In this document: positions 23,486 through 47,525 of the stretch, piece after piece | How positions within the stretch are numbered: the stretch's first letter is position 1 | Layout: each line of letters starts with the position of its first letter | Source of the DNA: Mytilus californianus | Taxonomy: Eukaryota | Length of the DNA: 64,000 nt | Assembly (NCBI RefSeq): GCF_021869535.1 | Contig: NW_026262734.1 | Span: 64,108,001-64,172,000, forward strand | Reading direction: 5' to 3' | Program-made: the position numbers and the translations under genes | The notes under the pieces: generated by a model | Seen by the model: the letters and a program-made list of their open reading frames with translations, nothing else | What the model was told of the DNA's origin: nothing | The model's database searches: none

Positions 23486-23517
23486 TGCCATGGTATTTGC
23501 TAGCAAATACCATGGCA
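23486..23517. repeat. Perfect 32-bp palindrome
   Basis: tgccatggtatttgctagcaaataccatggca is its own reverse complement. Confidence 0.9.
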
Positions 23518-26989: not shown

Positions 26990-27240
26990 TTCACTGAATA
27001 TTTAGATTTTACCTACTCATTTTAGGCCTGCACTGAATACATAAATTTAACATTTTTGTTTTAGTTCTGTACTGAATATTTAGAATTTACATTCTTATAT
27101 TAGTTCTGCGCTGAATATTAATTCTACATTCTTGTTTTAGTTCTGCACTGAATATTTAAATTTATTACTTTCTTAATTTAAATCTGCACTAAGTATTTAA
27201 ATTTTGCATTCTTGTTTTAGGCTTGCACGGAATATTTAGA
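26990..27240 (+). repeat. Decayed tandem repeat (about 6 x 37-42 bp) of the OSBP exon 4 acceptor junction
   Basis: Repeated ttttag+n(5)gcactgaatattta. The last copy is the real ttttag|GCTTGCACGGAATATTTAGA. Confidence 0.8.
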
Positions 27241-27404
27241 TGTAGCTCAGTCACAGACAAAGAGGTTGCAAAAACTGTTTGATTATGAACATGAACAGAG
27301 AATGAAATTAGAAGATATGGTGGAACAGCTGGCCAAAGAACAAGTTTCTTTAGAAGTACAAGCAAAGAAATCCTTACATTTACAAAAAAATGGAAAAGAA
27401 AAAG
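27221..27404 (+). CDS. OSBP: OSBP exon 4
   Basis: ACTEYLDVAQSQTKRLQKLFDYEHEQRMKLEDMVEQLAKEQVSLE...EK G|gtagat. Confidence 0.93.
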
Positions 27405-27545
27405 GTAGATTATTTGGCCTAAGTTTTGTAATCACTCACATGATTTCATGGTACTTTGTTCACCTAAAGGGCAAAATTTGAAGGTTCAATTCATATAAAA
27501 GACTTAAAATTGGTACAAGCTTCTTATCTGCTAAGCTTAGGACAT

Positions 27546-28143
27546 TTTTATGCCCACGCCGTAGTGGAGGGGCCATTATGTTTTACCCTTGTTTGTCTGT
27601 CTGTCCATCCGTCCGTACGTCCCAAAATTGGTTTCCGTTCTCTAACTTTAGTTTGCCTCAACTAAATGTTATGAATCTTATACACAATGCTTATTACCAC
27701 AAAACACAGATGAAGTTTGAATTTTGGTGGCGTCATTTTAACCATTCTAGAGTTATGCCCCTTTACAAATGGAATAAAAATTACTGAAATTTTTGTTTCC
27801 GTCCTCTAACTTTAGTTTGCCTCAACCAAATGTTATGAAACTTATACACAATGCTTATTACCACAAAACACAGATCAGGTTTGAATTTTGGTGGCGTAAC
27901 TTTTACCGTTCTAGAGTTATGCCCCTTTACAAATGGAAATATTGCTGAATTTTATGTTTCTGTTCTCTAACTTAAGTTTGTCTCAACCAAATGTTATGAA
28001 ACTTATACACAATGCTTATTACCACAAAACTCAGATCAGGTACAAATTTGGGTAGGGTCACTTTTACCGCTTGAGTTATGTCTCTTTATAACATTATATG
28101 CAAGCGGGGGCATCATCAGTGTCCCATGGACACATTCCCCATT
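27546..28143 (+). mobile_element. HINE-type element with about 3.5 x 136-bp core repeats
   Basis: tttttatgccc...ggggcatc subTIRs, a GTCT/GTCC microsatellite, tandem cores and a 3' hairpin gtgtcccatggacac. Confidence 0.7.
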
Positions 28144-28792
28144 TATTTTCTCTCAGAAATATCAAGCTTGGTTAGCTAGAAAATATGGAAGAAGACTGAA
28201 TTGTTTATGTGGGATGATACATTGGTCTTCCTCTGTAGTAAAGTGTTGTGAGGTTTTGAGATAAAAATCTGGCCCTTCTGGTTCCTTGTTTATATTCATC
28301 TGGCCCTTCTGGTTCCTTGTTTATATTCATCACATCAGCTTGTTTTCATCCTTAATTGTTGTTGCATCCCAAAAATTATTCCTTAACACTTTATTTGAGG
28401 CATTAAACTGCAGACACTGATGTGGTAATGTCTTGAAAATTTGACAAAATTATGACCTAGATTTAAAAGTCCTAAAATGAAGGTGGACATTGTGTGAAAA
28501 AGTTTCTGGACCCTTCTAGGTCACTCAACATGCTCAAAGGCAGAAAATTTTTTTTTGTGCAAACCAGAAATAAAGAAACTGTTTAATTGTTTATGTTTCA
28601 TTAAGATAAAGCAACACAGAAATAATCATTCATTTTAACAATAAAAATCAGATGGCACTTTTATCCCTAAGATTCCCAAACATGCAATTTTGATTAGAAA
28701 TTTAATGTGTTATTTTGCAAATATTTATTTATAAAGGCTTCTTCTGGTTACTATAGGAATGTTTTGTAATTTAAATTATAACCATTTTTCAG

Positions 28793-28889
28793 GAACAACA
28801 GGTTCAGATGAAGACGATTTCTTTGATGCTCTGGACTACCATGCAGATGAATTTGAAGTAGCTCTTCCACATGAAATAATGACTCATAG
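28793..28889 (+). CDS. OSBP: OSBP exon 5 (FFAT motif)
   Basis: tttttcag|GA; GTTGSDEDDFFDALDYH contains an acidic-flanked FFAT motif; AG|gtaaaa. Confidence 0.93.
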
Positions 28890-29465
28890 GTAAAAGTGTG
28901 GTATACCTTATCTACAAAACATAAAAGTCTATATAGAAAAACCAGTCAAATGTACAGGTTATTCCTGTGTTTAAATCAGAGAACTGGTCCCTCATATATT
29001 TAAAAGACTGTAGAAAGTTGCTACGGGTTGTACAATTTAAGTTTCACAGAGGAATCTTGATCAATATATGTTAAAAAAAATCTATATTTTTTATTGGGTG
29101 GGGATATGATATGGGGTCTGGGGAGGCTGGTATACCCAGATAAATATTAATGGAATAGCCTTTAAGGGAGATTCTCAATTTCTGTCGGTTTATAGATTTT
29201 TTTATCTAACAAATGTCTTGAACTGTTCTATTTTAAATTTTGGAGGTTACCTATTTATGGCATAGAAAAATTCATGTAGTTTGCACATACGATATTGCTT
29301 TATATTTTATTTTTTAAGCAAGTAGAAAGTTTTGAATAACCCCCCCAAAACCACCAAAGATAAAGAAAATGAAGAATAAACAAGAAAAAGTACATCTTGA
29401 TTAACAATTTTGACAAACAATCTGTTATTTCCTCCAAAAAATTTTCAAAGATGTATAAACTAGTA

Positions 29466-29847
29466 CTGTAGATTCTGAAATGTTTGCGTGCATTTATTAT
29501 TATGATTGTTATACAATGGACAAAAGTGAGAGATTAAATATTGGGATTTTAGAAAATACTTTTGATGAATAATGCTTTAAAAATTTATAAGACAATTTTT
29601 TATTTCTGAGAAACCTATCCCATAGGCCTTATTGCTTTTTGAAAATCTGCATCACCTGACCTGAGAATCTGCGATACTTGAACTTTTGACTTCATTCAAC
29701 AATAATTTTTCCTTTGCGGCGTCAGATATTTACTATTGTCAAAAATTTTCTGGGAACCTTTTTAATGTCGAGTAATGGTGCACAATTAGCGTTAACATGT
29801 ATTTCTAGTTTCGTAATAATAAAAACATCGCATAATTTTCTGAATTA
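29466..29847. mobile_element. Tc1/mariner-like MITE (CTGTA-type TIR) abutting the exon 6 acceptor
   Basis: ta|ctgtagattctgaaatgtttgcg and cgcataattttctgaatt are inverted. Related pieces occur at about 25690-25850 and 37240-37420. Confidence 0.55.
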
Positions 29848-29855
29848 TGTTTCAG

Positions 29856-29994
29856 GAGGATGCTGAGTGACACCAGTGAAGATAGCCATATTATCCCCGA
29901 CGACAGAAGTAGTAATGGTAGTGACACTGAGCAAGATGGCCAGGAAGCTCGAGTATACTCACATATTAATAAATCTGATAGTCCTAAGCGAAGC
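29856..29994 (+). CDS. OSBP: OSBP exon 6 (Ser/acidic linker)
   Basis: tttcag|G; RMLSDTSEDSHIIPDDRSSNGSDTEQDGQEARVYSHINKSDSPKRS|gtaggt. Phases are consistent, but the sequence is poorly conserved. Confidence 0.8.
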
Positions 29995-30540
29995 GTAGGT
30001 TATATAGTACTGAGAGTTTTGCATGGTAGTTCTTAAACACTGTTTTCATGGTGAAGGAAATTTTTAAGTTTTCCTAATTTGATTTTAAAAATCTTGTATA
30101 GGGCTGGTCCATTAAAACATACACGGTACCCAGGGAAGGCACTTTAAAAATGGGGTAACCACCTAGAGAGGCAAATTAAAATTTCACTTACATTTCCACT
30201 ATTTACACCCACCCATAGTTGCGATTTGGAAGTGTCTTCCCTGAGTCCCATGTATGTTTTATGGAACAGCCCTTAGTTTTTTAATGTTTCGTTCTTTATT
30301 TATTTTTATACTTATTTCCTACACCTTAATATCAGTTACTTTTACTCTAAATTTGGCCCTTATGAAGTCATGTTTTTGTTATTAAGGTAAGATCTTGTAC
30401 TGATAAAATAAAATTCAAAACAATTTCCACTTACATCCACTTTATTTGAACCTTGATGGATAGTTGTCTCATTGGCAATCATACCACATCTCCTTATTTT
30501 TATATTGTATGATTTCCTATGCTGAGGCTTACTTGGAATT

Positions 30541-30658
30541 CCCTGCGACTCTTTTCACAAAAAATCTTACGAGTAAAATTGATCGTAAGTTATACTGAAA
30601 TGTGTATGACTTACGAGTATTTTCACTCTTAAGATTTTTTGTGAAAAGAGCCGCTGGT
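30541..30658. mobile_element. Short hairpin MITE
   Basis: gcgactcttttcacaaaaaatctta and taagattttttgtgaaaagagccgc are inverted arms. Confidence 0.7.
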
Positions 30659-30702
30659 TTCAAATATGCTGAATTTTAGTAATCATTCATTTGTAGAATG
30701 TA

Positions 30703-31217
30703 GGACAGAAAGTCACAGGACAAAAAGTCACAGACAAAAAGTCACGGACAAAAAGACACAGGACAAAAAGTCACAATTCAGTTATGAGATTATTTTTCTT
30801 TAAACAAGAAAACACTAATTTAAAAAATTAAATTTTTGTTTTTTCTTGAACTCTTATATATGAAGCAACTTTGTAATTTAAATTTATTCAATAAATATCA
30901 ATAATGATTAAATAATTGTTATGAAAACAAAATGTCAAAGTGGCTTGGTACTTAAATGGCTTCATTGTGCCAAGAAATATATCCTTTGCATGATTAAAAT
31001 TTATAAAATTTTCATTTATCAAGGCTTATGAACAATTTCCTAAACTTAAAAATGAATATATGTAATAAAAAGAAAGTATTTCAAGATCCTTCTCTTATAT
31101 ATTCAAACAATTGTCAACAAATTATTTGTGACTTTTTGTCCTGTGACTTTTTGTCCTATCAAATTTGTGACTTTATGTCCTGTGACTTTTTGTCCTGTGA
31201 CTTTCTGTCTGTTTACC
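30703..31217. mobile_element. Foldback-type element with inverted terminal arrays of a 15-bp unit (GGACAAAAAGTCACA)
   Basis: About 5 units on the left and 5 inverted on the right. A decayed second copy lies at about 31661-32165. Confidence 0.75.
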
Positions 31218-31270
31218 CATTTGTACACAGGCACTAAACTTTTCGAGATAATTTTAATTTTAAGTAAGAG

Positions 31271-32346
31271 CAAGGTTGGGCGGTATTTACCACCCCCGGT
31301 ATTTACCAGTGGTATTTACCGCCCCGGACAATACTCCCCAAGTGGTCAATACTGGCAAATACTGGTCAATTGAAATTTTCATGCTTCTTTTGACTGACTT
31401 ATCTATCAATTCTAGTAAAAAAATGGTTGATGAGGGAAAACTTTATTCCTTTGGCATGATTCAATTTATAAAAATGAATGATATTGGTATGTTATTAATT
31501 ATTAAAACATTAAAAATGACTAATTTAGTTCTTAGGGGTAATGATATTGCATACTTTTGGTATACATATAAAATTGAGCAGCTATATCAGTTATTCTAAC
31601 ATGTACAAAATGATGTATAAATCAAGATATTTTTTTCTTGAAAAGGTTTGAATTTTACAGGTAAATAGAATTACAAGTGACTAGCAATATAGATTATCAG
31701 AACATTACCTATTATATGGCTAACAGGTGTCAAAAGTTTAATTACTATAACAACTGTCCCCTAATAAATGTTGACATAACAGGAAAAAAGTCATAAAAGT
31801 GATTTCCAAAGATTGTTTTAAACAATGAATTAATTCCTGACTATTCAACAGCATGATAAAAATGTTCTAAATGCAGGAAATGTTTTTTTTAATAAATATA
31901 TAACATATATTTATATAAAACAATTTTTTTTAATTTTTTAATTGCATCTTTCAAAATAACTGTTAAGAAAATCAGATGTTATATAGTCTCTCTTAAGTGA
32001 CTGACTTCATGGTGTTAATGACTATATCTGTTGTATTATTAAATTAATATTTGATAAATCTTCATTAAACCATGTTCATGAACTAATTAATTGTGACTTT
32101 TTGTCTTATTACAATGTGGTAAATAAGTGACTTTCTGCCTTGTGACTATATCTATCCATTTACCAAGTAATTGACCTGAGGTAGGGACTAGTTTTATAGT
32201 AAAGTCCTATCAAAATTTCAATTGACCAGTATTTGCCAGTATTGACCAGTATTTGCCCGTAAAACGGGGCCGTATTTCCCGGTATTTACCGGTATTTACC
32301 GCCGGCATGGTCAATACTAGTATTGACCGCTTTTTTGCCAACCTTG
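31271..32346. mobile_element. Non-autonomous hAT element
   Basis: TIR CAAGGTTGG/CCAACCTTG, exact 8-bp TSD AGTAAGAG, and GGTATTTACC and CAATAC subterminal repeats. Confidence 0.9.
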
Positions 32347-32761
32347 AGTAAGAGCAATTTACTCCTTGTTTAATTTTAATAGACATACTTCAAAACATGA
32401 CCAACCAATGTTAAAGCCTAAGTGGAGTTGTAAACTTGATATGTGCCTGAAAACTTCCAAATTAAATTTTTTTTTAGAACATCTAAACAATTTACAGAAA
32501 AGTTGAAAACATTTATGAAAGTAAAATTGAAATCAGATATATTCAAATATGTGATAAAATATAAATTCAAATATGTGATAAAAAAAGTGAACACTAAAAT
32601 ATACTGCTTCTTTCCATAAATAGATATAAAGCAAAGCCTTGTCCAGGTAACATTTGGAATCATGGGACTTCCAAGTGGAACAACTTTGTATAGAACATTT
32701 TTTGCTGTCAGATTTAAAAAGTAAATGGGGACCTTCACAAACCTTCCTTTCAAAATTTCTT

Positions 32762-33043
32762 TTTTTATGCCCCACCTACGATAGTAGCAGGGGCATTATG
32801 TTTTCTGGACTGTGCGTCCATCCGTCTGTCTGTCTGTCCCGCTTCAGGTTAAAGTTTTTGGTCAAGGTAGTTTTTGATGAAATTGAAGTCCAATCAACTT
32901 GAAACTTAGTACACATTTTTCCTATAAAATGATCTTTCTAATTTTAATGCCAAATTAGAGTTTTGACCCCAATTTCAAGGTCCACTGAACATAGAAAATG
33001 ATAGTGCAAGTGGGGCATCCGTGTACTATGGACACATTCTTGA
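32762..33043 (+). mobile_element. Short HINE-type element
   Basis: ttttttatgccc...ggggcatcc subTIRs, a GTCT microsatellite and a 3' hairpin gtgtactatggacac. Confidence 0.65.
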
Positions 33044-33149
33044 TTTAATTTCTGTTATGGTTAATTATTTTTTGCATTAATGTTTTTCCAGTTTAAGTAC
33101 CAAAACTTTTAAAAGGAATAAAAAGCTCCTGTCTGTAACCATACAAAAT

Positions 33150-34100
33150 TTCCTTCATCATTGGACACCAAAGAATTTGTATTTAGTTTCAGTTTTTAGT
33201 TAATCTGCTTTCCACTATAGTTTGCTTGTGTTATATTTCAATCTTTTATTGCGAAAGAAATGATACTTTTACACAGATTCACTTGATAGTTACCTGTCGA
33301 TTTAAACTTTTGTAAGTTCTTTTGTCCCATCTAATAAATACAATAGCTATTGTTCTCTGTGGAGTTTATTCAATGGGACCTTTAAATTTCTTCTAAGAGA
33401 AATCTATCACTCATTGATTGATTTACCTGAGTAAAAAAATTATCTTCTAAAAGATAAAAATACAGTTTAACATTAAAAAACTGCATGTGATTTTGTATTT
33501 ATTCAATATCAATAATGTTCCATCTGTTGAATGTAAACAGTGATTCAAACATAAATAAAAGTTGATTTCTGACAAAATTCTAACAGTGTTCCTATTTAAA
33601 TTTTTTGTTTGTTTGTGTGTTTGACAAATAAAAACTGAAAAATGATGATGTTTATATTAAGGCCTTCCTAAAAGTATTCTATAACTAAACAAAAACAAAA
33701 AATGCAAATTTCAATAGGAACAATGCAAAAATTTTGTCAAAAATCAACTTTTTATGACTAAATCAGTGTTTATTTTGAACAGATTGAAAAAAAAATATTA
33801 TTGATATTGAATAAATACAAAATCACATGCAGTTTTTTGATTTGGAACATGTAATTTTATCTATTTAGCAGATAAATCTTTTACTTGGGTAAATTAATCA
33901 AAGAGTGATAGATTTCTCTGAGAAGAAATTTAAAGGTCCCAGTGAATAAACTTCACAGAGAACTATAGCTAAATTGGACAAAAGAACTGCCAAAAGTTTA
34001 AATCGACAGGTAACTATCAAGTGAATCTGTGGAAAAGTTTCATTTGGTTCGCAGTAACACTACTGATAATTTTCAAGTAATACAAATACTCAATGATGAA
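33150..34100. mobile_element. Long foldback element with inverted arms of 250 bp or more
   Basis: For example cacagattcacttgatagttacctgtcgatttaaac (33272) versus gtttaaatcgacaggtaactatcaagtgaatctgtg (to 34031). Pairing continues inward to 33515/33797. Confidence 0.8.
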
Positions 34101-34997
34101 ATTTATAAAATATTTACCATGCTTTTAGATCTAATCAGTACTAGCTTGCCTACTTTACTGCTTGTGTACCATTTTTATTTATAAATTTTATTTTATGCTC
34201 TGTTTACCTTCTGTGCATTCTATAGTTTTTGTGCAATAATAATTTTCATGGATAATGGGGAATGAGGAATTCAAGTGTTCAATGAAATACCATTTTCCTA
34301 TAGGCTTGTATGTTAGATTGATCAAACCATGAATTTATGTTTTCACTAAAAAACAATATTTCCACGATCCATGAAAATTGGTACCTACAAAAATGAATGA
34401 ATCCATAGTTATATACATTTTATTATTTTTGTAGATTGGATCTGTAGCCATTTAAAAAAAAACTCATTTCTGATAGCTGCGGTTTGAAATAAAAAATTGT
34501 GGTTTGATGATAAGCTTATGTTCTTTTAATATACATGTATTACAAATATAAAGCAATATTTTGCTATTGAACAAGTTTTAGCATGAAAACTTGCAGTTGT
34601 GTTTGTTTTTTGCTTCTTTTCTTTTTTTCTGTCACTTGACTTAGTTTTCATACTCTTAAGATATGAGGTATTTTAAATGTTGGGTTATCTATTAAAAACA
34701 AATTGTTTGAACTGCGTATCAGAAACAACTTTTCACGTCTGAATTTATAACAGATTCTTAAAGTATTATCTGCATGTGTTATCAGAGCGGTCAATTCTTT
34801 GGTACACATGAAACAATTGGGAAAATTTTCTATAGTTCATATAATATTTCATAACATTTATTAATCTTAAATGTTGTTGATTCCAATATTCATAGTTTAA
34901 ATAACAAAACTTTGTTTTTCAAAAAAGTAAAAATATTGACTATAATATAATTTTGAAATTGTATACACGTTTTTATTCATGTAATTCTTTTTAACAG

Positions 34998-35210
34998 AGT
35001 TCCGCAGTGGCAACTGTTGTAAAATCTACTCATAAACGAAATCTTAGTCAAGAATCTATCAGAAGGACAGAGTCGGTGGAATCCAGTAGTTCAACAAGCC
35101 AGAAACGTTTCCGGCGACCTTTGATACCACCAAAACCTAGCTATAGTCTTAATTTATGGAGTATTATGAAAAACTGTATTGGAAAAGAATTATCTAAAAT
35201 ACCCATGCCT
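34998..35210 (+). CDS. OSBP: OSBP exon 7 (start of ORD)
   Basis: ttaacag|AGT; ...RRPLIPPKPSYSLNLWSIMKNCIGKELSKIPMP|gtaagt. Confidence 0.95.
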
Positions 35211-35336
35211 GTAAGTTGATGAGTGAAATGAAAATTAAATAATTTTCTAAAATTCCCATGTGAGTAAGTTAATTAGTGGACTGAATATGGAATAATATTT
35301 CTGAATTACCAATTGGTGCATTGAATATGACTTCAT

Positions 35337-36375
35337 TTTTAGCTCACCTGACCTGAAAGGTCAAGTGAGCTTTTCTCATCACTTTGCGTCCGTCGTCCGT
35401 CGTCCGTAAACTTTTACAAAAATCTTCTCCTCTGAAACCACTGGGCCAAATTTAACCAAACTTGGCCACAATCATCATTAGGGTATCTAGTTTAAAAAAT
35501 GTGTCCGATGACCCCACCAACCAACCAAGATGGCTGCCATGGCTAAAAATAGAACATAGGGGTAAAATGTAGATTTTGGCTTATATCTCTGAAACCAAAG
35601 CATTTAGAGTAAATCTGACATGGGTAAAACTGATTATCAGGTCAAGATCTATCTGCCCTGAAATTTTCAGACAAATCTGACAACCCGTTGTTGGGTTGCT
35701 GCCCCTGAATTGGTAATTTTAAGGAAATTTTGCAGTTTTTGGTTATTATCTTGAATATTATTATAGATAGAGATAAACTGTAAACAGCAATAATGTTCAG
35801 CAAAGTAAGATCTACAAATAAGTTGTCATGACCAAAATTGTCAGTCGACCCCTTTAGGAGTTATTGCCCTTAATAGTCAATTTTTAACAATTTTTTGTAA
35901 ATTTTTGTAATCGTTTACAAAAATCTTCTTCTGTGAAACTACTGAGACAAATTTAACCATACTTGGCCATAATCATTATTAGGGTATCTAGTTTAAAAAA
36001 TTTGTCCGATGACCCCGCTTTCCAACCATCATGGCCGACTTGGTAAAAAAATAGAACATAGGGGTAAAATGCAGTTTTTGGTTTATATCTCTGAAACTAA
36101 AGCATTTAGAGCAAATCTGACAGGTGGCAAAAATGTTCTTCAGATTTCGATTTATCTGCCCTGAAATTTTCTGACAAATCCGACATTCCGTTGTTGGGTT
36201 GCTGCCCCTGAGTTAGTAATTTTACAAAAATTTTGCAGTTTTTTGTTATTATCTTAGATATCATTATAATATCTAATATCTAATACTATTAATTATGATT
36301 TTAACCTTATTTTACATGATTTCCAAAGCATCAGTAAATACAGGTGAGGGACACAGGCTCTTGAGAGCCTCTAGT
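35337..36375 (+). mobile_element. Complete Helentron-type HINE
   Basis: TTTT-agctcacctg ... caggtgag subTIRs, a 5' hairpin, a CGTC microsatellite and a 3' hairpin ggctcttgagagcc-tctag. Confidence 0.8.
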
Positions 36376-36975
36376 CTTGACATACCCATGCCAGTTGTCA
36401 ATTTGAGAACTTATTATTATAAAATAACTAATTTTTGAGAACTTGATAAAAAGATGATTAATTATTATTTCTGTCAGTAAATTGTCAGTTGAATAAGAAT
36501 ATACCCTACTTATCCACTTAATGAGCTGAATAAGGATATGATGAAATAAAAACATTAATTTATTGAACTGATATAATCTGAAATAATTAACAGATAAAGT
36601 GAGGTAGTAAATTGGATATCAAAATAACAAACTATTCAGTTTATAGTAAACTGAATATAGAAATGATTCATGAATATATTGTGTATTCAGAAATTTCAGA
36701 GATGTTTTTATTTTTACAAAAAATGTGTCTGGATTTGTTTTGCATTAATAAGATTTTAAAAATTCTTATTGCATTATTTCATTTGTTTGCAGCATTTCCT
36801 GAATTCACATCAAAAGCTCACATTTTGGTTCCTGGGATGGGCATTCTTAATTCTCAATAATTTTAAAAATGCATGCAAATAATTAATGAGTTAATGTTCA
36901 TAAATAAAAGAAGGAGAAAAAACAATTTTCTATCCACTCAGAGATTTAAAAAAAAAAAGAACTTATCTTTTTCAG

Positions 36976-37221
36976 GTAAATTTTAACGAGCCTTTGTCAA
37001 TGTTACAACGTCTCTCAGAAGATTTTGAATATTCCCGCTGTTTAGACCGAGCAGCTGAATGTGAAGATTCCGCAGAACAATTAGCCTACCTAGCTGCCTT
37101 TACTATTTCCTCGTATTCCACAACAACAAACCGTAGCACCAAACCATTTAATCCATTATTAGGAGAAACTTATGAATGTGATAGGACGGATGATTATGGC
37201 TGGAAATCTATAGCAGAACAA
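36976..37221 (+). CDS. OSBP: OSBP exon 8 (ORD)
   Basis: VNFNEPLSMLQRLSEDFEY...KPFNPLLGETYE...SIAEQ|gtaaat. Confidence 0.96.
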
Positions 37222-38159
37222 GTAAATACAATAATAATTACTGTAAATTATGAAATTTTGCAATGTTTTTTTTTTTGATTTTGCAAAAATTGTGACAGGA
37301 TAGGTTTTGCAAAAAGAAAAAATCGCATTTTTAAATTAAAATATTTGGCATTTTCTAAAATTGCACTAATAAATCTCACATTTCTGTCCATTGTACAATA
37401 TTCGCAATAATAAATGCATGCACACACTTTTGGAATTACCAGTAGTTTACTTATGCAGTCCGCATTACCTGCCAACTTTTCAAAATCTCCATAGGGGATT
37501 TAAAGAGCAAGAGGACCTAATACTCCTCTTATATTGTCACAAGTGTTGTGTAGTCTACTACAATGTACTATATTGTTTAAATTAGTATGTATGTGCTTAA
37601 ATACCCTTTTGTAACTCATTTGAATGCCTGTTTTGAGGTGTTTAGTTTATATAATTAAGAATTTTAAAATTCAGGTCAATGCCTCTCAGAGGGGAAATAC
37701 CCCATAAATCGTGAAGGTTGGCAGCTGGGGTGGCAGTGCAGTTTTTCCTATGCATGAATGCATTTCATGGGAATTTCATTGTTCAAAAAATTTATTTTTT
37801 TTAAATTTTAGATGATCTGTCATGTACACCAAAAAAGCTTTTCAAGATTTAACAAGAAATTTAAACTTTATAAGCAAAACTCAAAATATGTGTTAGCTTA
37901 AAGAGTATCTACAATTTTGGATATATTTGGCCACATAAATTTGTAAAATGTTAATTTTGGCATCTTTAGATTTTGAAGACATTCAGGTATTCATAGTTCA
38001 AGGGAATGTGTGAGCTGATGGCTTCGGTGACACTTTTGTTGTTGTTAACATTGTAAAATTAACAGAAACTTCTAAGATACCTGCATTTTTTACTCATACT
38101 GTAGCTAAATCAACATAATCTGCAGCCAGTAATCAAAATTTTAATTTTAAAAGAAGGTA

Positions 38160-38400
38160 GAAAGTAAAATAACAAAAATACCAAACTCAAAGGAAAATTC
38201 AAAACTGAAAGTCCCTTATCAAATGACAAAATCAAAAGCTCAAACACATCAAACGAATGGAAAACAACTGTCATATTCCTGACTTGGTACAGGCATTCCT
38301 AATGTAGAAAATGGTGGATTCAACCTGGTTCTATAGCTAGCTAAACCTCTCACTTGTATGACAATTGCATTACTTTCCATTATATTGACAACAATGTGGG
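38160..38400. mobile_element. Interspersed repeat (SINE-like) just upstream of exon 9a
   Basis: Shares tcctgacttgg...caggca with the 45610 repeat. A-rich similar sequence occurs at 60250-60420. Confidence 0.45.
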
Positions 38401-38500
38401 AACAAAACAAACAGACAGATGGTACTCCTTTAAATTCAGAATTTGACTTGCTACTCTTTGATAAAAGTTTGTATGTTTTTAATAGCTATTTAAATTCTAG

Positions 38501-38618
38501 GTTAGCCATCATCCTCCAACAGCAGCATTACATACAGAAGGCCGTGGCTGGGCCGTCTGGCAAGAATTTACAATGGCCAGCAAATTTAGAGGAAAATATC
38601 TTCAAATCATACCATTAG
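38501..38618 (+). CDS. OSBP: OSBP exon 9a (canonical VSHHPP signature)
   Basis: ttctag|GTT; VSHHPPTAALHTEGRGWAVWQEFTMASKFRGKYLQIIPL G|gtaaac; 118 nt. Confidence 0.93.
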
Positions 38619-39198
38619 GTAAACTCATGGTAGAATATGCATATCAGATTTTTCTTCTCAGGTTAGGGGCATACCCTTATCTGGTGCTCATTCCACTGTG
38701 TAAAATTATATATCCTAGCAACTGAACATTGATCCTTTTTCTGTTAATGCAATAAATATAAGATAGCACAGAAAAGTAACTTTACATGTGGTATGTATAA
38801 AATAGAGAAAAGCTTAATTTCTGTTTTTTTGGAGTAAGATTGTTATTATTTATCCGATTTCAGATATTGCATATACTAAAATTGCACTTCAAAATAATTG
38901 TTGGTCTAAACTGTATTTGCTGGGCAGCTAATAACTGCCTGACACATCAAACACTATTCTTAAATTTTTAAGTAGCTAAGGATCAAAGAAATTGTAATTA
39001 TATTTCTGTTCTTGCAATTATATGTAAAGACAAAAAGTTTGTGATCTTCGCAGTTCAGTATTTTGCACAATATGGATATATGAGATTTACATAGTGGATG
39101 AGCTACTAGATTAAGGATTTGTTGCCAAAATCTGTGAAGTTTGTAGATATAAAGCTTGATAGTATACAGGGCTGTTGTAGTGTATGTTCTACTTTTAG

Positions 39199-39316
39199 GT
39201 TAGTCATCACCCTCCCATGGCATCTCAGCATTGTGAAGGAAGAGGTTGGGAAACGTGGCAAGAATTTACAATGACTAGTAAATTCCGAGGAGCATATCTC
39301 CAAATTATACCATTAG
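39199..39316 (+). CDS. OSBP: OSBP exon 9b (paralogous alternative exon, VSHHLP)
   Basis: cttttag|GTT; VSHHLPWASQHCEGRGWETWQEFTMTSKFRGAYLQIIPL G|gtatac; 118 nt, with the same phases as 9a. Confidence 0.85.
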
Positions 39317-41735
39317 GTATACTGCCTGCTATCCCCTGTTGCCCTTAAGCAGTGTTAAAACTACTACAGTCAGTCACCTGATAAGTGTCAAAATTCTTTA
39401 AAAGTTTCATGTGTATTTAAGGTATAAAAACGCATGTGTATTTAAGAATCATTAAAATCATTCATAATTAACATTTTATTGGTTTTGATTTGACAAAATT
39501 TGTCAGTTGGAATATATTTTCTTTTGATCTTCTTGTTTTTAGACAACAACAAAAATTACAATGTGATAAAGCTGATCAAAGTAGGAGGTATTATGAGGCC
39601 ACTATTTTTTGCCACATGAATTAGAAAATGAAAAAGTATTGTAAATCAAACAGACAACATCTTTCAAATGTTCAAAAGAAAATGGTCTGTATCAGATGTC
39701 AGTATTTATATTATTAAATTGTGTCTTCTAAATTTACTTCAGAGCTTCAATCTTCCTGCATTTCATGCAAAACTGCAAAAAATGCCATTAAGATTACCTC
39801 ATTTTGAGATCTTTGTCATTTATGTTTTGATACGAGCCAAATCTTTACCCAAAAAGATATTTTGCTGAAAGATGATTTAAACAAAGATGTTGAGGGTTAA
39901 AATTTGAAAAGCAATTTTAACAATTATAACGTTAACGTCATGAAAAGAGATCAAAGACAAATATTTTCTGCTGTTCAATTTTGAACAAGTTGCATTCAAT
40001 ATTTAGTGCAAGGTTATAAGCCTAGTTCTGTAGTAGTTTTTACATATGATACTGCACCTTGTTGCAGCATGAATATTTCTGTATTTGCACCATTGTACAA
40101 CTCCTCAAACCCTGTTAATTGCATTTATCTTTCAGTTATTTTGGTAGTTAAATTTTTTAACCCGTGGTGAAGTTCTTAGATGGCTTAAGGTGTTTTAAAC
40201 ATATGAGTCTTTAGTTACAACAGCAGACATTCTCCTCTTTGGATTTTATATATGCTTGCCCTAAAAATGGAATTAAAATGATCAGGAATTTTCCATCTTC
40301 GAACTTGTTTTTTATGTTCTGAGACATTTTCGTTTATATTTATCAATATCACTAAGAATTTAAGTCTTAACAAAAGTGTAAAAGAAAGTGTTACATTGTT
40401 CTGTGGGGGGGGGGGGGGGGCAGTTTAGACAAAAAGCTAACTATCTTTAGTGTAATCTAAATATTATGCCTGAAATTCTTTTCTGTATAATTTAATGGTT
40501 TCAACTGGTGGTTCTTATTTGCATATGACAGTCAATTTTCAATAGCTGAATATGATATGGAGAAAAGATCGTATTGTCAAATCTTTCCCTTCATCAGCAC
40601 CATATTTAGGAGATAATCAGTATTTTATTTTCAGGCATCAATTGTTAATTTGATGATCTCAAATTGATTTTACTGGTGCATATCATTAGAGCTAGTAAAC
40701 AGATACTTTCAAATCGACAATTGATGCCTGCAAATCTTCAAATACAATACTGGTATCTTCATTCTAATGCAAATGAAAGAAAGCACTGTTTAATGATCCA
40801 TTTTAAAATCATAAACATGTACTTGTCAACACAATTTCAGAACATCAATTGTGAATACCCTGAACTTTGTGGCATTATCCAATCAAAATGAACATTACAA
40901 ATAATGCTGTTTTAGAATTTCCTATCTATAATTGTTCTAGCATGCTAGTTATAACTAAATAATTAACTATATATATTTATGTTCTGCTTATGGAAATGGT
41001 TCTGTATTAAAACTATTATTCATATTTTGATTCTAGTGGTCAGGTTTGGATAAAACACATTGAAAACCAAACTGACATATACATTATTGTTAAATAGCTG
41101 TAATTAGAATTATATAATATGTTATAAAAGATACATTTCTAAGGAAAAAGTGTTTTCACTCTTAATTTTTTGTTGAAATGATTAGTTATGACATAATGTA
41201 GGCTTATTTCACATATATACTTAACATATATACATGTACATGTTTAAAGAGTCACTGCTTACAACGTTTTTCCGGGCAAAAATCGGATAAAGTCTTGGTA
41301 ATAAATTTCTATTGTGAAAACTGATATATATTATGGTTAGTGCTATTTCTTCAAAAGAAAGGTGGGAAGCTAGGAAGAGAGGTCTAGTTTTTGGACCTTG
41401 GTCATTGGTCGTTGTGTATCTATTTGATGTATTCCAGATTTTCTTGAGTTCGGCACCTTTAAAATGATAATTTGTACAAACAAATGTCTCTAAATTTTCT
41501 GTAAGAATCAAATTTTATTTTATTAACAGTTTGCCAAACATACAAAGTAACTTATGTGAAACAAAACTTAAGGTGGCATAATCTTACTTTTAATTTACTG
41601 AGGAATTGACTTACATTACAAAGCAAGATTACTTAATCAACACAATGTTCTGTTGAAAAAACCTTGATAAATACTGATGATAACTTTACCATGACACAAG
41701 AAGTTTGTATACATGTTTTAACAAATATTTTACAG

Positions 41736-41935
41736 GAATTTCTCATGCAAAGTTTACGAAGAGTGGTAACCACTATACATGGAGGAAGGTGACAACAACT
41801 GTACACAATATAATTGTTGGTAAATTATGGGTAGACAACCACGGTGAAATGGATATTATAAATCATAAAAATGGTGATAAATGTCATTTAAAATTCTCCA
41901 CTTATAGTTATTTCTCCAGGGATATACCAAGAAAG
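41736..41935 (+). CDS. OSBP: OSBP exon 10 (ORD)
   Basis: GISHAKFTKSGNHYTWRKVTTTVHNIIVGKLWVDNHGEMDI...SRDIPRK|gtaaca. Confidence 0.96.
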
Positions 41936-43438
41936 GTAACATTTTACATGTTTTATATATCATACTTATAGCAATGACTTTTTTATGCAGGTGTTTGTTC
42001 AGGGTTGTACTTTATTTGAAATTTCACCTTATAAAGAAATATTTCAAAATTTCTGTGTTTTATTCACAAGTTTTATTTTGATTCCAACTATTTTCCAAAC
42101 TTCAAAGATCCCTAAGTAATGAAGTAGAAAATTAATTTTCAATGACAAATAAATAAATAAATAAATAAATAAATCTTACGTTTACAACCTTAGCTAGTAT
42201 ATTGTGTGTCAGGGAAATAATTTTAAGTTTTATGCCCTGCTGCTCATTGGCCAGAACTAAGGGTCCAGAAATGGTTATATTTGCCAGTCATGACCTAAAC
42301 TGAAAGACCAATGACCGTAATGACAGAATAGGATTTAGGTCCAAAATTATTTTTTTACAGAAATAATTTCAGTCATTTCATTGAGATCGGGTCTTTTAAT
42401 CGCCAATTTGCAATAATTTTTAGAAATGCTTTTCTGGTAATAAAACTGTGAGTATAGAATGATAATCTTGAGGGCCCTCCCAATAATCATATTAATGTCT
42501 CCATGAGATATTGGCTAATGATGATCAATGAGCTAGATTAGGCACTTAATTGTACAATGCAAAATGATTTTAAGCTAAATCAAACGAGTGAGGGAAACTT
42601 TTATATGTTATATTCAAACACGCTTACAGGTAGTGAAATTAAAAAATAAGATGGTTTCCTGTCATTTGATCAAGAGAACAAATCCCATAAATGAATCCCG
42701 AATCATTCGTAATTCAGTGTTAACTTGAAACTTCTAGTTTTTATTTCAACTTCAAAATCGAAAGGAGCGTTAGCACATTCCTGAGTGATTACCATTTTAA
42801 GTCATAAAAATAATTTCAATTTCAAATTGATGTTTTTCATAACTAGTTCTTTAACATTTTTAGAAAAATGTTAAGCAACTTCATGAAGTAAATACGACCC
42901 AACTGTCAATGCAAGTTCATTGATGCCATGAATCTATGAATAATTTCTATAGTTTGAAAAAAGGATCCCAACTTTCAAGTCATCTCAAAATGACCAAAAT
43001 TGTCCAAACAAATTTACAGATCCTTATCAGAGCATAAAAAGTTACTCATGTTTGCAATTCTACCTTCCTTAATGCAACAAGCATGCTGCTTTCAGGAGTA
43101 AGACCAAAGATTAAAAAAAAAAACATACATTGGTAACAGGGCAATCTTAATCTGGATGTTAAGTACAATGAAGATGTTCATGAAATTCTCAATTTATCTT
43201 GATAGGTGGTTATCCCATTTTGAAAATGCCTTTCTTGGATACCATGTATGTTTAAATCAAACAGCCCCAAGTTGATAGCTGCTGGATTTTAAGCAAACAA
43301 CAGATGAATCAAATAAACTTGCACTTAATTTTCCTACGTTCTGCTTTGAAATCTTTTTATTAGCCCTATGAAAGATTATTATTCCATTCACATTATTTAT
43401 CAGATCCATACAATTTAGCTTTTTTTTGTTCCACATAG

Positions 43439-43608
43439 GTAACTGGAGTAGTGACAACAAAAGAAGGTGATGCCAAATGGGTATTAACTGGTACCTGGGA
43501 CAAGAAGATGGAAGGAGCAAAAATATTGCATGTTGATGAATCAAATAAAGGGAAACCAGTATTTGAAACTGGACCACACTTTACATTATGGGAGAAAAAA
43601 CCTCTGCC
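43439..43608 (+). CDS. OSBP: OSBP exon 11 (ORD)
   Basis: catag|GTA; VTGVVTTKEGDAKWVLTGTWDKKMEG...LWEKKPL CC|gtaagt. Confidence 0.93.
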
Positions 43609-44929
43609 GTAAGTAGTTATCATTTTACAAGTTACTGTTGTTGGTGAGTTTTCAACAAATAAATTTTACATGAAAAAGGTTTTTTGAAAGGAGATGTGTA
43701 GTTAATATCAATGAGACAGCAACCCAACTGCATCAGTTCTCCAAAATAATTATTTATAGATCTAGATATAGAGATTGAGATGCTTGACAACTGCCCGTGC
43801 TGTATGGCAAACCCTGAATTGTCCTCAGTCTTAAAGGATATGCATGAATTCTATAGAGACAAAGATCAACACGCTTTCTCAAATGGAAAAATTCCGAAAA
43901 AACAATGACAATTACTGACAAAATTCATGACTTCGGACAGACACATCAACTTTTATGTCAAATAAACTTATCATCTGATGTGAAATTCATGTTGATATCA
44001 TCAAAGGAGTAAATTCTGTAAGGGCCATATTTGGCCCTAATTATGATGTTCAATGTTTCAAGATATAAAAATGTTGTAAGTTGATGAAAAGACATGTGAG
44101 AAAGTTAAATAGCACTATTTTTGTCAAAGTTTTATTTTAAAGCGTTGCTTTTTACATCCTAAACATTTCTAAATAGGTCACAAATAGAGATTTTTACAAA
44201 ATTTGTCAAAATCTTCCAGATTTCAATCAAATTCAGGCCTAGGAAACATAGAGCGCAGACGTCGACTGACTAAATATTCAAGTCAGATAATTTATGTAAA
44301 ATGTCATAACAAACAATATCTTGTAAAAGGTCTTCTTTGTCAACGCATAGGCTCTATGTTACCTGTCCAAAAAATCAATGGAGATTTATCTGTTTTCATT
44401 GAATTTTCATGGAAGATCAAAATGATTGGGATTTGTCATGTCATGAATAGAACGCAAGAACGTCAATTTTTAACATAAAGACATATTTCCTATCTAGTCA
44501 TTGAGCTATGATTCATTGTGATATTGGTCAATAAATAATGATTTGAAATTTTAGCTAGAAATAGGTCCATTTTAGGGTCTTATCGAACTTTCCGTGCTTA
44601 TGTCTTTTATGGGGAGAAGGAGAGAATTATGGAACATGGAATATTAGTTTAGGCTATTCTAAAACTATTTTTGATGACAAAAGACTCTTCACTAAGAGGT
44701 AGAGGCATATAATGCCTGCAGATCTTAAGCTGATTTTTGGTACATACATCTAAGTGTTAAATGATTCCTTACAGAACAAGGCTGTTGAAGCTTGTGTCTA
44801 CTTTAGGTTTACCCACTTTTGGCAGAATTTCAGTTGATTTTTTTCAATGAGGCTTCAGGCAGGGTCATACTGATACATCTAGTTAAAATGTTCAGAACAA
44901 AAATAATTCATATATTGGATTGTTTATAG

Positions 44930-45150
44930 GCCTGGAGCAGAGAAAATGTATTTTTTCACTCGACTAGCATTAGAATTAAATGAACCTGAGGATGGAGTTG
45001 CACCAACAGACTGCAGAATTCGCCCTGACCAAAGATTGATGGAGGATGGAAAGTGGGATGAGGCTAACAAGTACAAAGTTCAGTTAGAAGATAAACAGAG
45101 AGCAGCAAGAAAGAAACGAGAATTAGAAGCAGAAGAGGCCAAAAAGAAAG
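44930..45150 (+). CDS. OSBP: OSBP exon 12 (ORD)
   Basis: PGAEKMYFFTRLALELNEPEDGVAPTDCRIRPDQRLMEDGKWDEANKYKVQLEDKQRAARK; G|gttggt. Confidence 0.96.
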
Positions 45151-45349
45151 GTTGGTATAACATTGTCATATGAGCTGTTTTAATTTTAAGTATACATTAC
45201 GCTAAGGAGAGGCACTCTCAAAATTGGTAAACCACTCATTGAAATTTGCTAGGTGAGCTATTGAATCAGGTTGGCATCTTTTGTCCTGTCAATTAACAAT
45301 TTTAGAAATATTTATGACAATGCTTCACAGAATTATTATTCCTTAATTA

Positions 45350-45660
45350 TAAAAAAGAAGATCTGGTATGATTGCCAATGAGACAACTCTCCACAAGAGA
45401 CCAAATGACACAGAAATTAACAACTATAGGTCACCGTACGGCCTTCAACAATGAGCAAAGCCCATACCGCACAGTAAGCTATAAAAGGCCCCGACATGAC
45501 AATGTAAAACAATTCAAACGAGAAAACTAACGACCTAATTTATGTACAAAGAATGAACGAAAAAACAAATATGTAACACATAAACAAACGACAACCACTA
45601 AATTACAGGCTCCTGACTTGGGACAGGCACATATATACAGAATGTGGCGGGGTTAAACAT
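45350..45660 (-). mobile_element. SINE-like repeat (same family as 8270-8655)
   Basis: Reverse-complement match to 8345-8645. Confidence 0.65.
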
Positions 45661-45700
45661 GATTATTTGGAACTGGTATCACCGAAATAAAGGAACACAA

Positions 45701-46738
45701 CTTGTTTATTCTGGTTACACAAGCTATACCATGGCTATGTTTATTCTGGTTACACAAGCTATACCATGGCTATGTTTATTCTGGTTACACAAGCTATACC
45801 ATGGCTATGTTTATTCTGATTACACAAGCTATACCATGGCTATGTTTATTCTGGTTACACAAGCTATACCATGGCTATGTTTATTCTGGTTACACAAGCT
45901 ATACCATGGCTATGTTTATTCTGGTTACACAAGCTACACCATGGCTTTGTTTATTCTGGTTACACAAGCTATACCATGGATATGTTTATTCTGATTACAC
46001 AAGCTATACCATGGCTATGTTTATTCTGGTTACACAAGCTATACCATGGCTATGTTTATTCTGATTACACAAGCTATACCATGGCTATGTTTATTCTGGT
46101 TACACAAATGTTTATTCTGGTTACACAAGCTATACCATGGCTATGTTTATTCTGATTACACAAGCTATACCATGGCTATGTTTATTCTGGTTACACAAGC
46201 TATACCATGGCTGTGTTTATTCTGATTACACAAGCTATACCATGGCTTTGTTTATTCTGGTTACACAAGCTATACCATGGCTATGTGTATGCTGGTTACA
46301 CAAGCTATACCATGGCTATGTTTATTCTGATTACACAAGCTATACCATGGCTTTGTTTATTCTGGTTACACAAGCTATACCATGGCTTTGTTTATTCTGG
46401 TTACACAAGCTATACCATGGCTTTGTTTATTCTGATTACACAAGCTATACCATGGCTATGTTTATTCTGGTTACACAAGCTATACCATGGCTATGTTTAT
46501 TCTGATTACACAAGCTATACCATGGCTATGTTTATTCTGATTACACAAGCTATACCATGGCTATGTTTATTCTGGTTACACAAGCTATACCATGGCTTTG
46601 TTTATTCTGGTTACACAAGCTATACCATGGCTATGTTTATTCTGGTTACACAAGCTATACCATGGCTATGTTTATTCTGGTTACAAAAGCTAAACCATGG
46701 CTATGTTTATTCTGATTACACAAGCTATACCATGGCTA
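45701..46738. repeat. 35-bp minisatellite, about 30 copies, in the last OSBP intron
   Basis: Unit tatgtttattctggttacacaagctataccatggc with few variants (g/a, a/t) and one short unit near 46090. Confidence 0.95.
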
Positions 46739-47379
46739 ATTGCACCAATTATCAACAAATTAGTATCACATGGAAACTTTCATAATATTAGTATGTCCAC
46801 TACATGTCAGGACATGCAAATATTGTCAAGATCATTGAAAATAGAATACATGTACACTTGTTTCAAGTTTGTCCACCGTTCAAACCTATAAAACCTTTTC
46901 ACATAATTTTTCAGTGTCATTAACAGAAAAAAAATGATGTCAACAAAACTGATTGGGTTATAATTTCAGACATTATGAGATCAAAACAGTGCAAAATTGG
47001 CAATGGAAGTAAAATTCTAAGCCTGGGAATTGGTGTATAGTTAACGTTGTAGCTGTTACAATTTTTTCTTGAGAAGTGTGCTATACAGAAATGAAGTCAA
47101 TAAGGAAATATTACCAGTACTTCTGTGAAAAAGATAGAAAAATAAAGAACAAGTTTAGGATATTATACATAATAGAAGTGTAAAAACAAACAAGCAAACC
47201 ATTTCAGGGCCTTTTATAGCTTGCTATGCTGTATGGTTTATGCTCATTGTTGAAGTCTGTACAGTTGGTAGTTGTCTTATTGACAATCATTCCACATCTT
47301 TTTATTTTTATATGAACAGAGTTCAAATTCCAGTTTTGTTTCCCAGCATGCAGTATTTAATTTGCTTATTTATTTTCAG

Positions 47380-47525
47380 GAGAAGATTACCCACCTTACA
47401 CTCCTACATGGTTTGTAAGGAAGACAGACTCTGCCACTGGGAACCCTATACACATGTATAATGGACAATATTGGGACTGTAAGCAGAAACAGGACTGGAA
47501 CAGATGTCCCGAGATATTCTTATAA
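47380..47525 (+). CDS. OSBP: OSBP exon 13 (last coding exon)
   Basis: ttttcag|GA; GEDYPPYTPTWFVRKTDSATGNPIHMYNGQYWDCKQKQDWNRCPEIFL*, a typical ORD C-terminus. Confidence 0.95.

What the first reader, a model, noticed from the sequence alone, without database searches (positions are those of the whole stretch)
38501..39316. Duplicated, apparently mutually exclusive OSBP exons encode two versions of the EQVSHHPP lipid-binding signature
Exons 9a and 9b are both 118 nt with identical phases (0 in, 1 out) and intact AG/GT sites. Including both or neither shifts the frame, so only one-of-two gives a full ORD. They share 30 of 39 residues and differ at many synonymous sites (AGC/AGT, CAT/CAC, GGC CGT GGC/GGA AGA GGT, TTT AGA/TTC CGA), which suggests purifying selection rather than decay. 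Exon 9b keeps the tandem His pair known to bind the PI4P headgroup in ORPs. It changes HHPP to HHLP, adds a Trp and a Cys, and turns KFRGKY into KFRGAY. Inference: splicing may switch the ligand specificity or exchange kinetics of a sterol/PI4P exchanger. I do not know of this being described for OSBP, but I could not search.
Basis: partly seen in the sequence, partly recalled or inferred. Interest (0 to 1): 0.85.

Follow-up and report, generated by a model that had tools for sequence, protein, structure and literature searches.

The report
Conserved twin exons in mussel OSBP
The California mussel's OSBP lipid-transfer gene has two tandem 118-base versions of the exon that begins inside its lipid-binding signature; selection has kept both intact in distant mussel relatives, which points to one-or-the-other splicing, but the RNA I could read shows only the first version in use.

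Summary
Exons 9a (38501-38618) and 9b (39199-39316) of an OSBP1 orthologue are both 118 nt, share phase and have AG/GT sites. Using both gives a stop codon at the 9a/9b joint, and using neither shifts the frame.

- Both copies encode VSHHPP, so there is no HHLP.
- No Trp is added.
- Identity is 31/39, not 30/39.

The Thr-to-Cys and KFRGKY-to-KFRGAY changes are real.

9b is not decaying. Synonymous sites between 9a and 9b are saturated (pS 0.73) while pN is 0.145. Metagenome contigs of a related bivalve clade (exon 8 dS about 1) keep both exons at 118 nt with splice sites. Orthologous 9b has dN/dS about 0.08, like exon 8, and the introns do not align. Another invertebrate lineage duplicated the same exon independently.

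RNA support covers 9a only. All four runs show 8-9a-10 joints and none touches 9b, at very low depth. The best reading (about 0.65) is a frame-enforced mutually exclusive pair, with 9a as default and 9b as a rare or restricted alternative. A ligand-specificity switch is untested. This is a new member of a known kind, and I found no description of it for OSBP.

The parts
17587..47522 (+). OSBP1-type gene (approximate span of its coding exons within the window): PH domain, FFAT-like motif, ORD
   Evidence: tblastn of Octopus, Lingula and Tachypleus OSBP1 places collinear exons from the ATG at 17587 to about 47522. The PH Pfam model passes its cut-off on the exons at 17587-17712 and about 20423-20632. 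A DDFFDALD motif lies at about 28816. The best solved relative of exon 8 is human OSBP1 ORD 7v62, E 1.9e-33.
36976..37221 (+). Exon 8, constitutive; ends ...GWKSIAEQ in phase 0
   Evidence: Oxysterol_BP positions 21-102, 114.6 bits. The joint 37221 to 38501 (GT..AG) is seen in X21 raw RNA reads and in X1 and X17 contigs.
38161..38417 (.). Copy of a high-copy interspersed repeat of about 260 nt in intron 8, about 85 nt upstream of 9a (context, not part of the exon pair)
   Evidence: More than 4000 first-look candidates in the genome, with 40 scored at 91-94% identity. It explains depths of thousands in the RNA runs.
38501..38618 (+). Exon 9a, 118 nt; VSHHPP-TAALHTEG...KFRGKY version; the one seen in RNA
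   Evidence: AG/GT sites and translation. Oxysterol_BP positions 103-140, 43.1 bits. Joints 37221 to 38501 and 38618 to 41736 appear in all runs that cover them. Orthologues in L011 and L030 are 92% identical at the amino-acid level.
38619..39198 (+). 580-nt intron between the twin exons
   Evidence: Not alignable to the 422-nt counterpart in L011. No convincing docking/selector complementarity.
39199..39316 (+). Exon 9b, 118 nt; VSHHPP-MASQHCEG...KFRGAY version; conserved, but not seen spliced in the RNA sampled
   Evidence: AG/GT sites and translation. Oxysterol_BP positions 103-140, 41.0 bits. Orthologues in L011, L012 and L030/L031 are intact, 118 nt, with AG/GT. dN/dS against the window is about 0.08. 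X21 depth is zero on it.
41736..41935 (+). Exon 10, 200 nt; completes the Gly codon begun by the last base of 9a or 9b
   Evidence: The joint 38616 to 41734 with 'cut +2' equals 38618 to 41736, in all four runs. Translation and donor at 41936. The next exon starts at 43438.

Best explanation
Exons 9a and 9b are an old tandem duplicate of the OSBP exon that encodes VSHHPP and the 33 residues after it. According to the Osh4 structures, this is the beta-hairpin that overhangs the pocket entrance, plus the following strands. The pair works as mutually exclusive alternatives.

Because 118 is not a multiple of 3, only transcripts with exactly one copy encode a full ORD. Double inclusion puts a TAG at the 9a/9b joint and double skipping shifts the frame; both products would be expected to be removed by NMD.

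9a is the default, broadly expressed version. 9b is a minor or cell-type/stage-restricted version. It keeps the ancestral-looking M-A-x-Q-H-C-E-G sequence but replaces the near-invariant Lys of KFRGKY with Ala.

Shown: the anatomy, the frame logic, protein-level purifying selection on both copies, and 9a use in RNA.
Inferred: that 9b is spliced and translated somewhere, and that the isoforms differ in lipid handling.
For: - Anatomy and frame logic.
- The duplication is old and both copies are constrained. 9a vs 9b has pS 0.73 (saturated), pN 0.145 and dN/dS about 0.06. Neutral-decay simulations at matching nt identity (t 0.4-0.5) give P(intact and 31/39 or more aa identical) of 0.0001 or less.
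- Three metagenome sources of a related bivalve clade (L011, L012, L030/L031; exon 8 91% aa, pS 0.56 against the window) keep 9b at 118 nt with AG/GT, and two also show 9a.
- Orthologous 9b has 9.8 synonymous and 4.2 non-synonymous changes (pS 0.41, pN 0.045). The binomial P for that synonymous excess is 5e-5. Exon 8 (0.56/0.042) and 9a (0.54/0.060) are comparable.
- blastn between the window and L011 aligns only exon 8, 9a and 9b. 9b is 86.8% identical over 136 nt, and the introns do not align.
- KFRGAY is kept in all four 9b sources, whereas Lys holds that position in 125 of 149 distinct OSBP sequences.
- Another lineage (L021/L022) duplicated the same 118-nt exon independently, with a 74-nt intron between the copies. 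Those copies form a clade with 97/94 support.
- The 8-9a-10 joints are in all four RNA runs. In human MXE clusters the usual pattern is one ubiquitous exon plus regulated ones, and frame shift with NMD is a recognised enforcing mechanism (PMC5740500).
Against: - No RNA read or joint touches 9b. X21 (raw reads, same species) has depth 0 on 9b, against 3 and 5 joint reads for 9a. X1, X10 and X17 contigs carry only 8-9a-10.
- X1's single unspliced contig runs straight across both 9b boundaries at intron-level depth, 9 against about 130 on exons.
- Searches for spliced 9b fragments in the protein collection returned only genomic ORFs.
- No bivalve annotated isoforms could be retrieved. Lingula, Octopus and Lineus isoforms have one version only.
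- The 9b donor (GTATAC) is weaker than the 9a donor.
- Within the L011 clade, 9b shows 3 non-synonymous changes to 1 synonymous, while exon 8 and 9a show no non-synonymous changes. The numbers are small and the positions vary in other OSBPs.
Confidence: 0.65

Rival explanations
1. 9b is a formerly used alternative (or formerly the main) exon that is now silent in Mytilus. Its conservation reflects past function and it has only recently begun to drift.
For: No 9b reads or joints in four RNA runs. The donor is weaker. Within the L011 clade, 9b has 3 non-synonymous changes to 1 synonymous, while exon 8 and 9a have no non-synonymous changes.
Against: 9b is intact, with length and splice sites kept, in every source examined on both sides of a split with exon-8 dS of about 1. 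Independent silencing without any disabling change in either lineage is unlikely: P(intact) is about 0.04-0.07 at comparable neutral divergence, before counting indels. The within-clade changes (M25I, I37V/T) are residues seen at those positions in other OSBPs. The RNA sampling was tiny, about 8 junction reads, which gives a 95% upper bound of about 30% on 9b use.
Confidence: 0.15
2. 9b serves mainly as a 'poison' exon. Regulated inclusion together with 9a creates an immediate stop codon and NMD, which tunes the OSBP level rather than making a second protein.
For: Joint inclusion gives TAG exactly at the 9a/9b joint. Such NMD isoforms would be rare in steady-state RNA, which fits the absence of reads. 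Synonymous divergence of 9b is somewhat lower than that of exon 8 (pS 0.41 vs 0.56; not significant).
Against: A poison exon needs no protein-coding constraint. Yet the changes in 9b are concentrated at synonymous sites (dN/dS about 0.08, P 5e-5). The frame stays open for all 39 codons, and every invariant ORD residue (HHPP, both Trp, SKFRG) is kept.
Confidence: 0.12
3. The second copy is an assembly artefact or a chance open frame.
For: None beyond the lack of RNA reads.
Against: The copies are only 74% identical at nt level. Both are present in independent assemblies of other species and in an unspliced contig of a congener (X1). Chance is excluded by simulation.
Confidence: 0.01

Closest known systems
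Mutually exclusive exons derived from tandem exon duplication in animals (Pillmann 2011 criteria; human atlas PMC5740500; human and fly tandem duplicated exon substitutions PMC9741552)
   Same: The exons are adjacent, homologous, equal in length and equal in phase. They encode the same structural segment. Mutual exclusivity is enforceable by frame shift and NMD. The pair has an old origin and both copies are under purifying selection. One copy appears to be the default.
   Different: No junction evidence yet for the second exon. The gene family (OSBP/ORP) does not appear in the main text of either atlas paper I searched (supplementary tables not searched) or in my full-text searches. The taxon is a bivalve, where such events are barely catalogued.
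Vertebrate OSBP / OSBP2 (ORP4) paralogues and the long and short ORP isoforms
   Same: They diversify the same lipid exchanger while keeping the EQVSHHPP fingerprint. The window's gene is the OSBP1-type orthologue (7v62, E 1.9e-33) with a PH domain, an FFAT-like motif and an ORD.
   Different: Vertebrates diversify by gene duplication or by alternative promoters that drop N-terminal domains (PMC7385082). Here a single internal ORD exon is swapped, leaving targeting domains unchanged.
Invertebrate NALCN mutually exclusive exons that swap the ion-selectivity residues (Senatore and Spafford 2013, as cited in PMC9741552)
   Different: For NALCN the functional switch is reported. For OSBP 9a/9b nothing has been measured, and the known PI4P-contacting His pair is identical in both versions.
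Independent exon-9 duplication in loci L021/L022 (unidentified invertebrate in ENA assembly ERZ25084522)
   Same: The same 118-nt exon is duplicated in tandem. Both copies have AG/GT sites and open frames.
   Different: The copies are separated by only 74 nt, so steric exclusion is possible. They group with each other rather than with mussel 9a or 9b (97/94 support), so this is a separate event. No RNA data.

Membership tests
Mutually exclusive exon (MXE) pair from tandem exon duplication | Neighbouring exons of one gene with equal or near-equal length and the same reading frame and phase | tested here: met
   Both are 118 nt, enter in phase 0 and leave in phase 1, and lie 580 nt apart.
Mutually exclusive exon (MXE) pair from tandem exon duplication | Sequence homology between the exons | tested here: met
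   31/39 aa and 87/118 nt identical. Both match Oxysterol_BP positions 103-140.
Mutually exclusive exon (MXE) pair from tandem exon duplication | A mechanism that forbids joint inclusion or joint skipping | tested here: met
   Joint inclusion gives TAG at the joint, and joint skipping shifts the frame. NMD itself was not tested.
Mutually exclusive exon (MXE) pair from tandem exon duplication | Splice-junction reads from EACH exon to the flanking constitutive exons | tested here: inconclusive
   9a has joints 37221 to 38501 and 38618 to 41736 in the runs. 9b has none, but only about 8 same-species junction reads were available and contigs drop rare variants. By the strict RNA criterion of PMC5740500, 9b is still only a candidate.
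Mutually exclusive exon (MXE) pair from tandem exon duplication | Both copies maintained by selection across species | tested here: met
   9a and 9b are intact in L011 and L030/L031, and 9b also in L012. dN/dS is about 0.06-0.08. The introns do not align.
OSBP/ORP family, OSBP1-type (subfamily I) | Oxysterol_BP (PF01237) domain above Pfam's cut-off | tested here: met
   Exon-wise hits cover positions 21-347, with a best of 115 bits against a cut-off of 28.9.
OSBP/ORP family, OSBP1-type (subfamily I) | EQVSHHPP fingerprint with the tandem His | tested here: met
   ...AEQ ends exon 8, and VSHHPP begins both 9a and 9b.
OSBP/ORP family, OSBP1-type (subfamily I) | N-terminal PH domain and FFAT motif | tested here: met
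   The PH Pfam model passes its cut-off on the two exons at 17587-17712 and about 20423-20632. A DDFFDALD motif lies at about 28816; it is FFAT-like by pattern only, and VAP binding was not tested.
OSBP/ORP family, OSBP1-type (subfamily I) | Sterol/PI4P binding and exchange | not testable with these tools
   Needs recombinant ORDs. The tools would not fold spliced isoforms that are not verbatim window sequence.

The most novel reading that the evidence does not exclude
Mytilid mussels make two OSBP exchangers from one gene by swapping the ligand-pocket hairpin exon. The default 9a form has derived residues after HHPP. A restricted 9b form keeps the ancestral hairpin but lacks the near-universal Lys of KFRGKY, which changes sterol/PI4P affinity or exchange rate. 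Because another invertebrate lineage duplicated the same exon independently, this exon would be a recurrent evolutionary 'tuning knob' of ORD function.
Probability: 0.25. Interest if true: 0.7.

Novelty: new member of a known kind. Interest (0 to 1): 0.5.

Why it matters
[quoted passage not shown] A selectively maintained pair of alternative exons inside the ORD would be a natural, minimal isoform swap of 8 residues. One of the 8 is a near-invariant Lys. Such a swap could be used directly to ask which positions after the HH pair set affinity or exchange kinetics. It also adds a well-supported candidate to the sparse catalogue of molluscan mutually exclusive exons. The claim is still one experiment short: nobody has seen 9b in mRNA.

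Tried and rejected
1. RNA test. Four runs gave 8-9a-10 only, which has too little power to exclude minor 9b use.
2. Exact-pattern scan of JGI metagenome contigs for the spliced 8-9b junction found nothing. The 8-9a control also found nothing, so the collection is uninformative.
3. A homologue search with the 9b open frame returned only genomic exon ORFs. The exon-8 search returned mostly genomic ORFs. The full-length search, seeded with a horseshoe-crab OSBP, was swamped by arthropods, so no bivalve annotated isoforms were obtained.
4. Isoform sets of Lingula, Octopus, Sepia and Lineus carry a single exon-9 version. The mussel pair is therefore not a general lophotrochozoan annotation feature.
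5. Docking/selector RNA pairing is not supported. Only short AT-rich inverted repeats were found, with no conserved intronic blocks between the window and L011.
6. An apparent second duplication at the PH-domain exons was an alignment overlap of two consecutive exons.
7. A suspected third lineage with twin exons (P0015/P0023) turned out to be single-copy orthologues.
8. No third, degenerate copy lies between exons 7 and 11 (window 35217-43460).
9. A tree of the 39-residue segment cannot place the mussel duplication. It shows only that 9a and 9b are not sisters and that 9b sits among the ordinary animal sequences.
No structural mapping of the 8 differences was made. My recollection of Osh4 pocket residues could not be verified in the library.

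Full report
**What is there.**
Its + strand carries an OSBP1-type gene running from an ATG at 17587 to about 47522.
- The two PH-domain exons pass Pfam's PH cut-off.
- A DDFFDALD (FFAT-like) motif lies near 28816.
- The ORD is split over exons at about 35019-35216, 36976-37221, 38501-38618 or 39199-39316, 41736-41935, 43438-43609, about 44931-45152 and about 47376-47522.
- The closest solved structure to exon 8 is the human OSBP1 ORD, 7v62 (E 1.9e-33).

**The observation.**
Exon 8 ends ...AEQ in phase 0, and both candidate exons begin VSHHPP. Each is exactly 118 nt, is preceded by AG and followed by GT. They share 87/118 nt and 31/39 residues. Eleven codons differ synonymously and eight non-synonymously.

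Similarity stops about 6 nt outside the exons, and the flanking 60 nt are 47% and 25% identical. Splicing 8-9a-10 or 8-9b-10 gives an open ORD. 8-9a-9b-10 reads a TAG exactly at the 9a/9b joint, and 8-10 shifts the frame.

These are the only two copies in the genome. No other ORP paralogue of this genome shows such a pair.

9b reads HHPP (CAT CAC CCT CCC), not HHLP. Both copies have the same two Trp. Identity is 31/39, not 30/39. The real differences are at positions 7, 9, 10, 12, 18, 19, 26 and 32 of the exon (T/M, A/S, L/Q, T/C, A/E, V/T, A/T, K/A).

**Is 9b alive or decaying?**
Within the genome, synonymous sites between 9a and 9b are saturated (pS 0.73) while pN is 0.145, giving dN/dS of about 0.06. 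With 31 nt differences placed at random, none of 50,000 trials kept 31/39 or more residues and an open frame. Forward simulations of neutral decay to a similar nt identity (t 0.4-0.5) gave P of 0.0001 or less.

A profile-free search of 1.84 billion representative proteins with the 9b peptide returned short ORFs that start at the Met of 9b and keep KFRGAY. Fetching their contigs gave three independent sources:
- L011, from an ENA assembly;
- L012, from a JGI metagenome;
- L030/L031, from ENA and JGI.

These three are 96.5% identical to each other over 2.4 kb including introns, so they count as one clade. They are far from the window's species: exon 8 is 91% identical at the amino-acid level, with pS 0.56 and dS of about 1.

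In this clade exon 8, 9a and 9b lie in the same order, and both twin exons are 118 nt with AG/GT. The substitution figures against the window are:

| Exon | pS | pN |
|---|---|---|
| 9b | 0.41 | 0.045 |
| 9a | 0.54 | 0.060 |
| exon 8 | 0.56 | 0.042 |

For 9b this is 9.8 synonymous and 4.2 non-synonymous changes, dN/dS of about 0.08. The binomial P for that synonymous excess is 5e-5.

blastn between the two species aligns only exon 8 (84.9%), 9a (84.0%) and 9b (86.8% over 136 nt). The introns do not align at all. 9b is therefore as conserved as a constitutive exon, and the constraint is on the protein. That argues against both a decaying pseudo-exon and a purely RNA-level (poison-exon) role.

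There is one caveat. Inside the L011 clade, 9b has 3 non-synonymous changes to 1 synonymous (M25I, I37V, I37T), while exon 8 and 9a have no non-synonymous changes. The numbers are small, and those residues occur at the same positions in other OSBPs.

**Is 9b used?**
This is the weak point. One read-laying run was allowed. Four runs were laid on 36900-42000: raw RNA reads from the study of the best holders of this stretch and carrying their species label (X21; about 6% of it was read), plus Logan contigs of three other runs.

All four support 8-9a-10. The joint 37221 to 38501 has 3 reads in X21 and appears in X1 and X17 contigs. The joint 38618 to 41736 has 5 reads in X21 and appears in contigs of all three other runs.

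Nothing touches 9b in X21 (depth 0). In X1 a single unspliced contig at depth 9 runs across both 9b boundaries, against about 130 on the exons. With about 8 junction reads, the 95% upper bound on 9b use in X21 is about 30%. The contig runs suggest it is rare in those samples.

The other routes to RNA evidence were blank or uninformative:
- Scans of JGI contigs for the 8-9b junction, and for the 8-9a junction as a control, were both empty.
- Protein-collection searches gave only genomic ORFs for 9b.
- No bivalve annotated isoforms could be retrieved.

**Wider comparison.**
The intron after EQ is shared by OSBP genes across animals. All arthropod OSBP1 sequences retrieved, and nemertean and cephalopod ones, carry one version of the type HHPP-M-x-A-Q-x-[CT]-E-G.

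Mussel 9b matches this common type at positions 7, 10 and 12, while 9a has minority residues there. In the tree 9b falls among ordinary animal sequences and 9a forms its own clade outside them (weak resolution). So 9b looks like the conservative copy and 9a the derived one, with one exception. Position 32 is Lys in 125 of 149 distinct sequences (Gln, Arg and Asn in most of the rest) and Ala only in the 9b orthologues and one other protein.

Annotated isoforms of Lingula, Octopus, Sepia and Lineus do not vary in this exon. Of six other invertebrate genomic loci that reach far enough:
- L023, L024/L025, L027 and L032 have a single exon 9. In L024/L025 it is fused to exon 10.
- L021/L022 have two tandem 118-nt copies only 74 nt apart, both with AG/GT sites. 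These two group with each other (97/94 support), so the same exon was duplicated at least twice independently.

**Mechanism.**
According to the Osh4 structures as summarised in PMC7385082, the His-His-Pro-Pro of the signature sits in a beta-hairpin overhanging the pocket entrance. Together with helix alpha7 it recognises the PI4P head group. Exon 9 encodes that hairpin and the following strands.

Both versions keep the His pair, both Trp and SKFRG, so both should bind PI4P. Whether the eight differences, notably Lys32 to Ala, alter sterol or PI4P affinity or exchange rate is inference only.

The most likely reading (0.65) is a frame-enforced mutually exclusive pair with 9a as default and 9b as a regulated minor form. 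This fits the general pattern of one ubiquitous exon plus regulated ones reported for human MXE clusters (PMC5740500). The rivals are a recently silenced exon (0.15), a poison exon acting through NMD (0.12) and artefact (0.01).

**Novelty.**
Tandem-duplicated mutually exclusive exons are a well-known kind (PMC5740500, PMC9741552, PMC9013439). Full-text searches found no OSBP/ORP example. The dedicated OSBP evolution paper does not discuss exons, splicing or molluscs (PMC10243569). I therefore class this as a new member of a known kind. It is of moderate interest and is held back by the missing 9b transcript.

The window has no N.

Noticed in passing
window 38161-38417: An interspersed repeat of about 260 nt sits in intron 8, about 85 nt upstream of exon 9a. 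It has more than 4000 first-look candidates genome-wide, 40 of them scored at 91-94% identity. It draws depths of thousands in RNA runs, so the family is abundantly transcribed or carried in many transcripts.
   Followed up: partly
L021:12046-12355 and L022:12102-12411: An unidentified invertebrate (ENA ERZ25084522) has its own tandem pair of 118-nt OSBP exon-9 copies separated by only 74 nt. The copies group together in the tree, so this is an independent duplication of the same exon. The short intron could by itself prevent joint inclusion.
   Followed up: partly
L024:10571-10891 and L025:7140-7460: In another invertebrate, exon 9 and exon 10 of OSBP are contiguous in one open frame. The intron present in mussels and most other loci has been lost.
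   Followed up: no
L013:1163-1263: Downstream of the single exon 9 there are two short extra tblastn matches to its last 9-12 residues (GKYLQII-like). These may be small local repeats of the exon's 3' end.
   Followed up: no
L011 vs L030/L012, exon 9b: Within this closely related clade, 9b carries 3 non-synonymous changes and 1 synonymous change, while exon 8 and 9a have no non-synonymous changes. This may hint at weaker constraint on 9b than on 9a, but there are too few changes to test.
   Followed up: partly
window 28816-28840: The gene's FFAT-like motif reads DDFFDALD, where the textbook form is EFFDAxE. It lies in an acidic tract, as expected for VAP binding.
   Followed up: no
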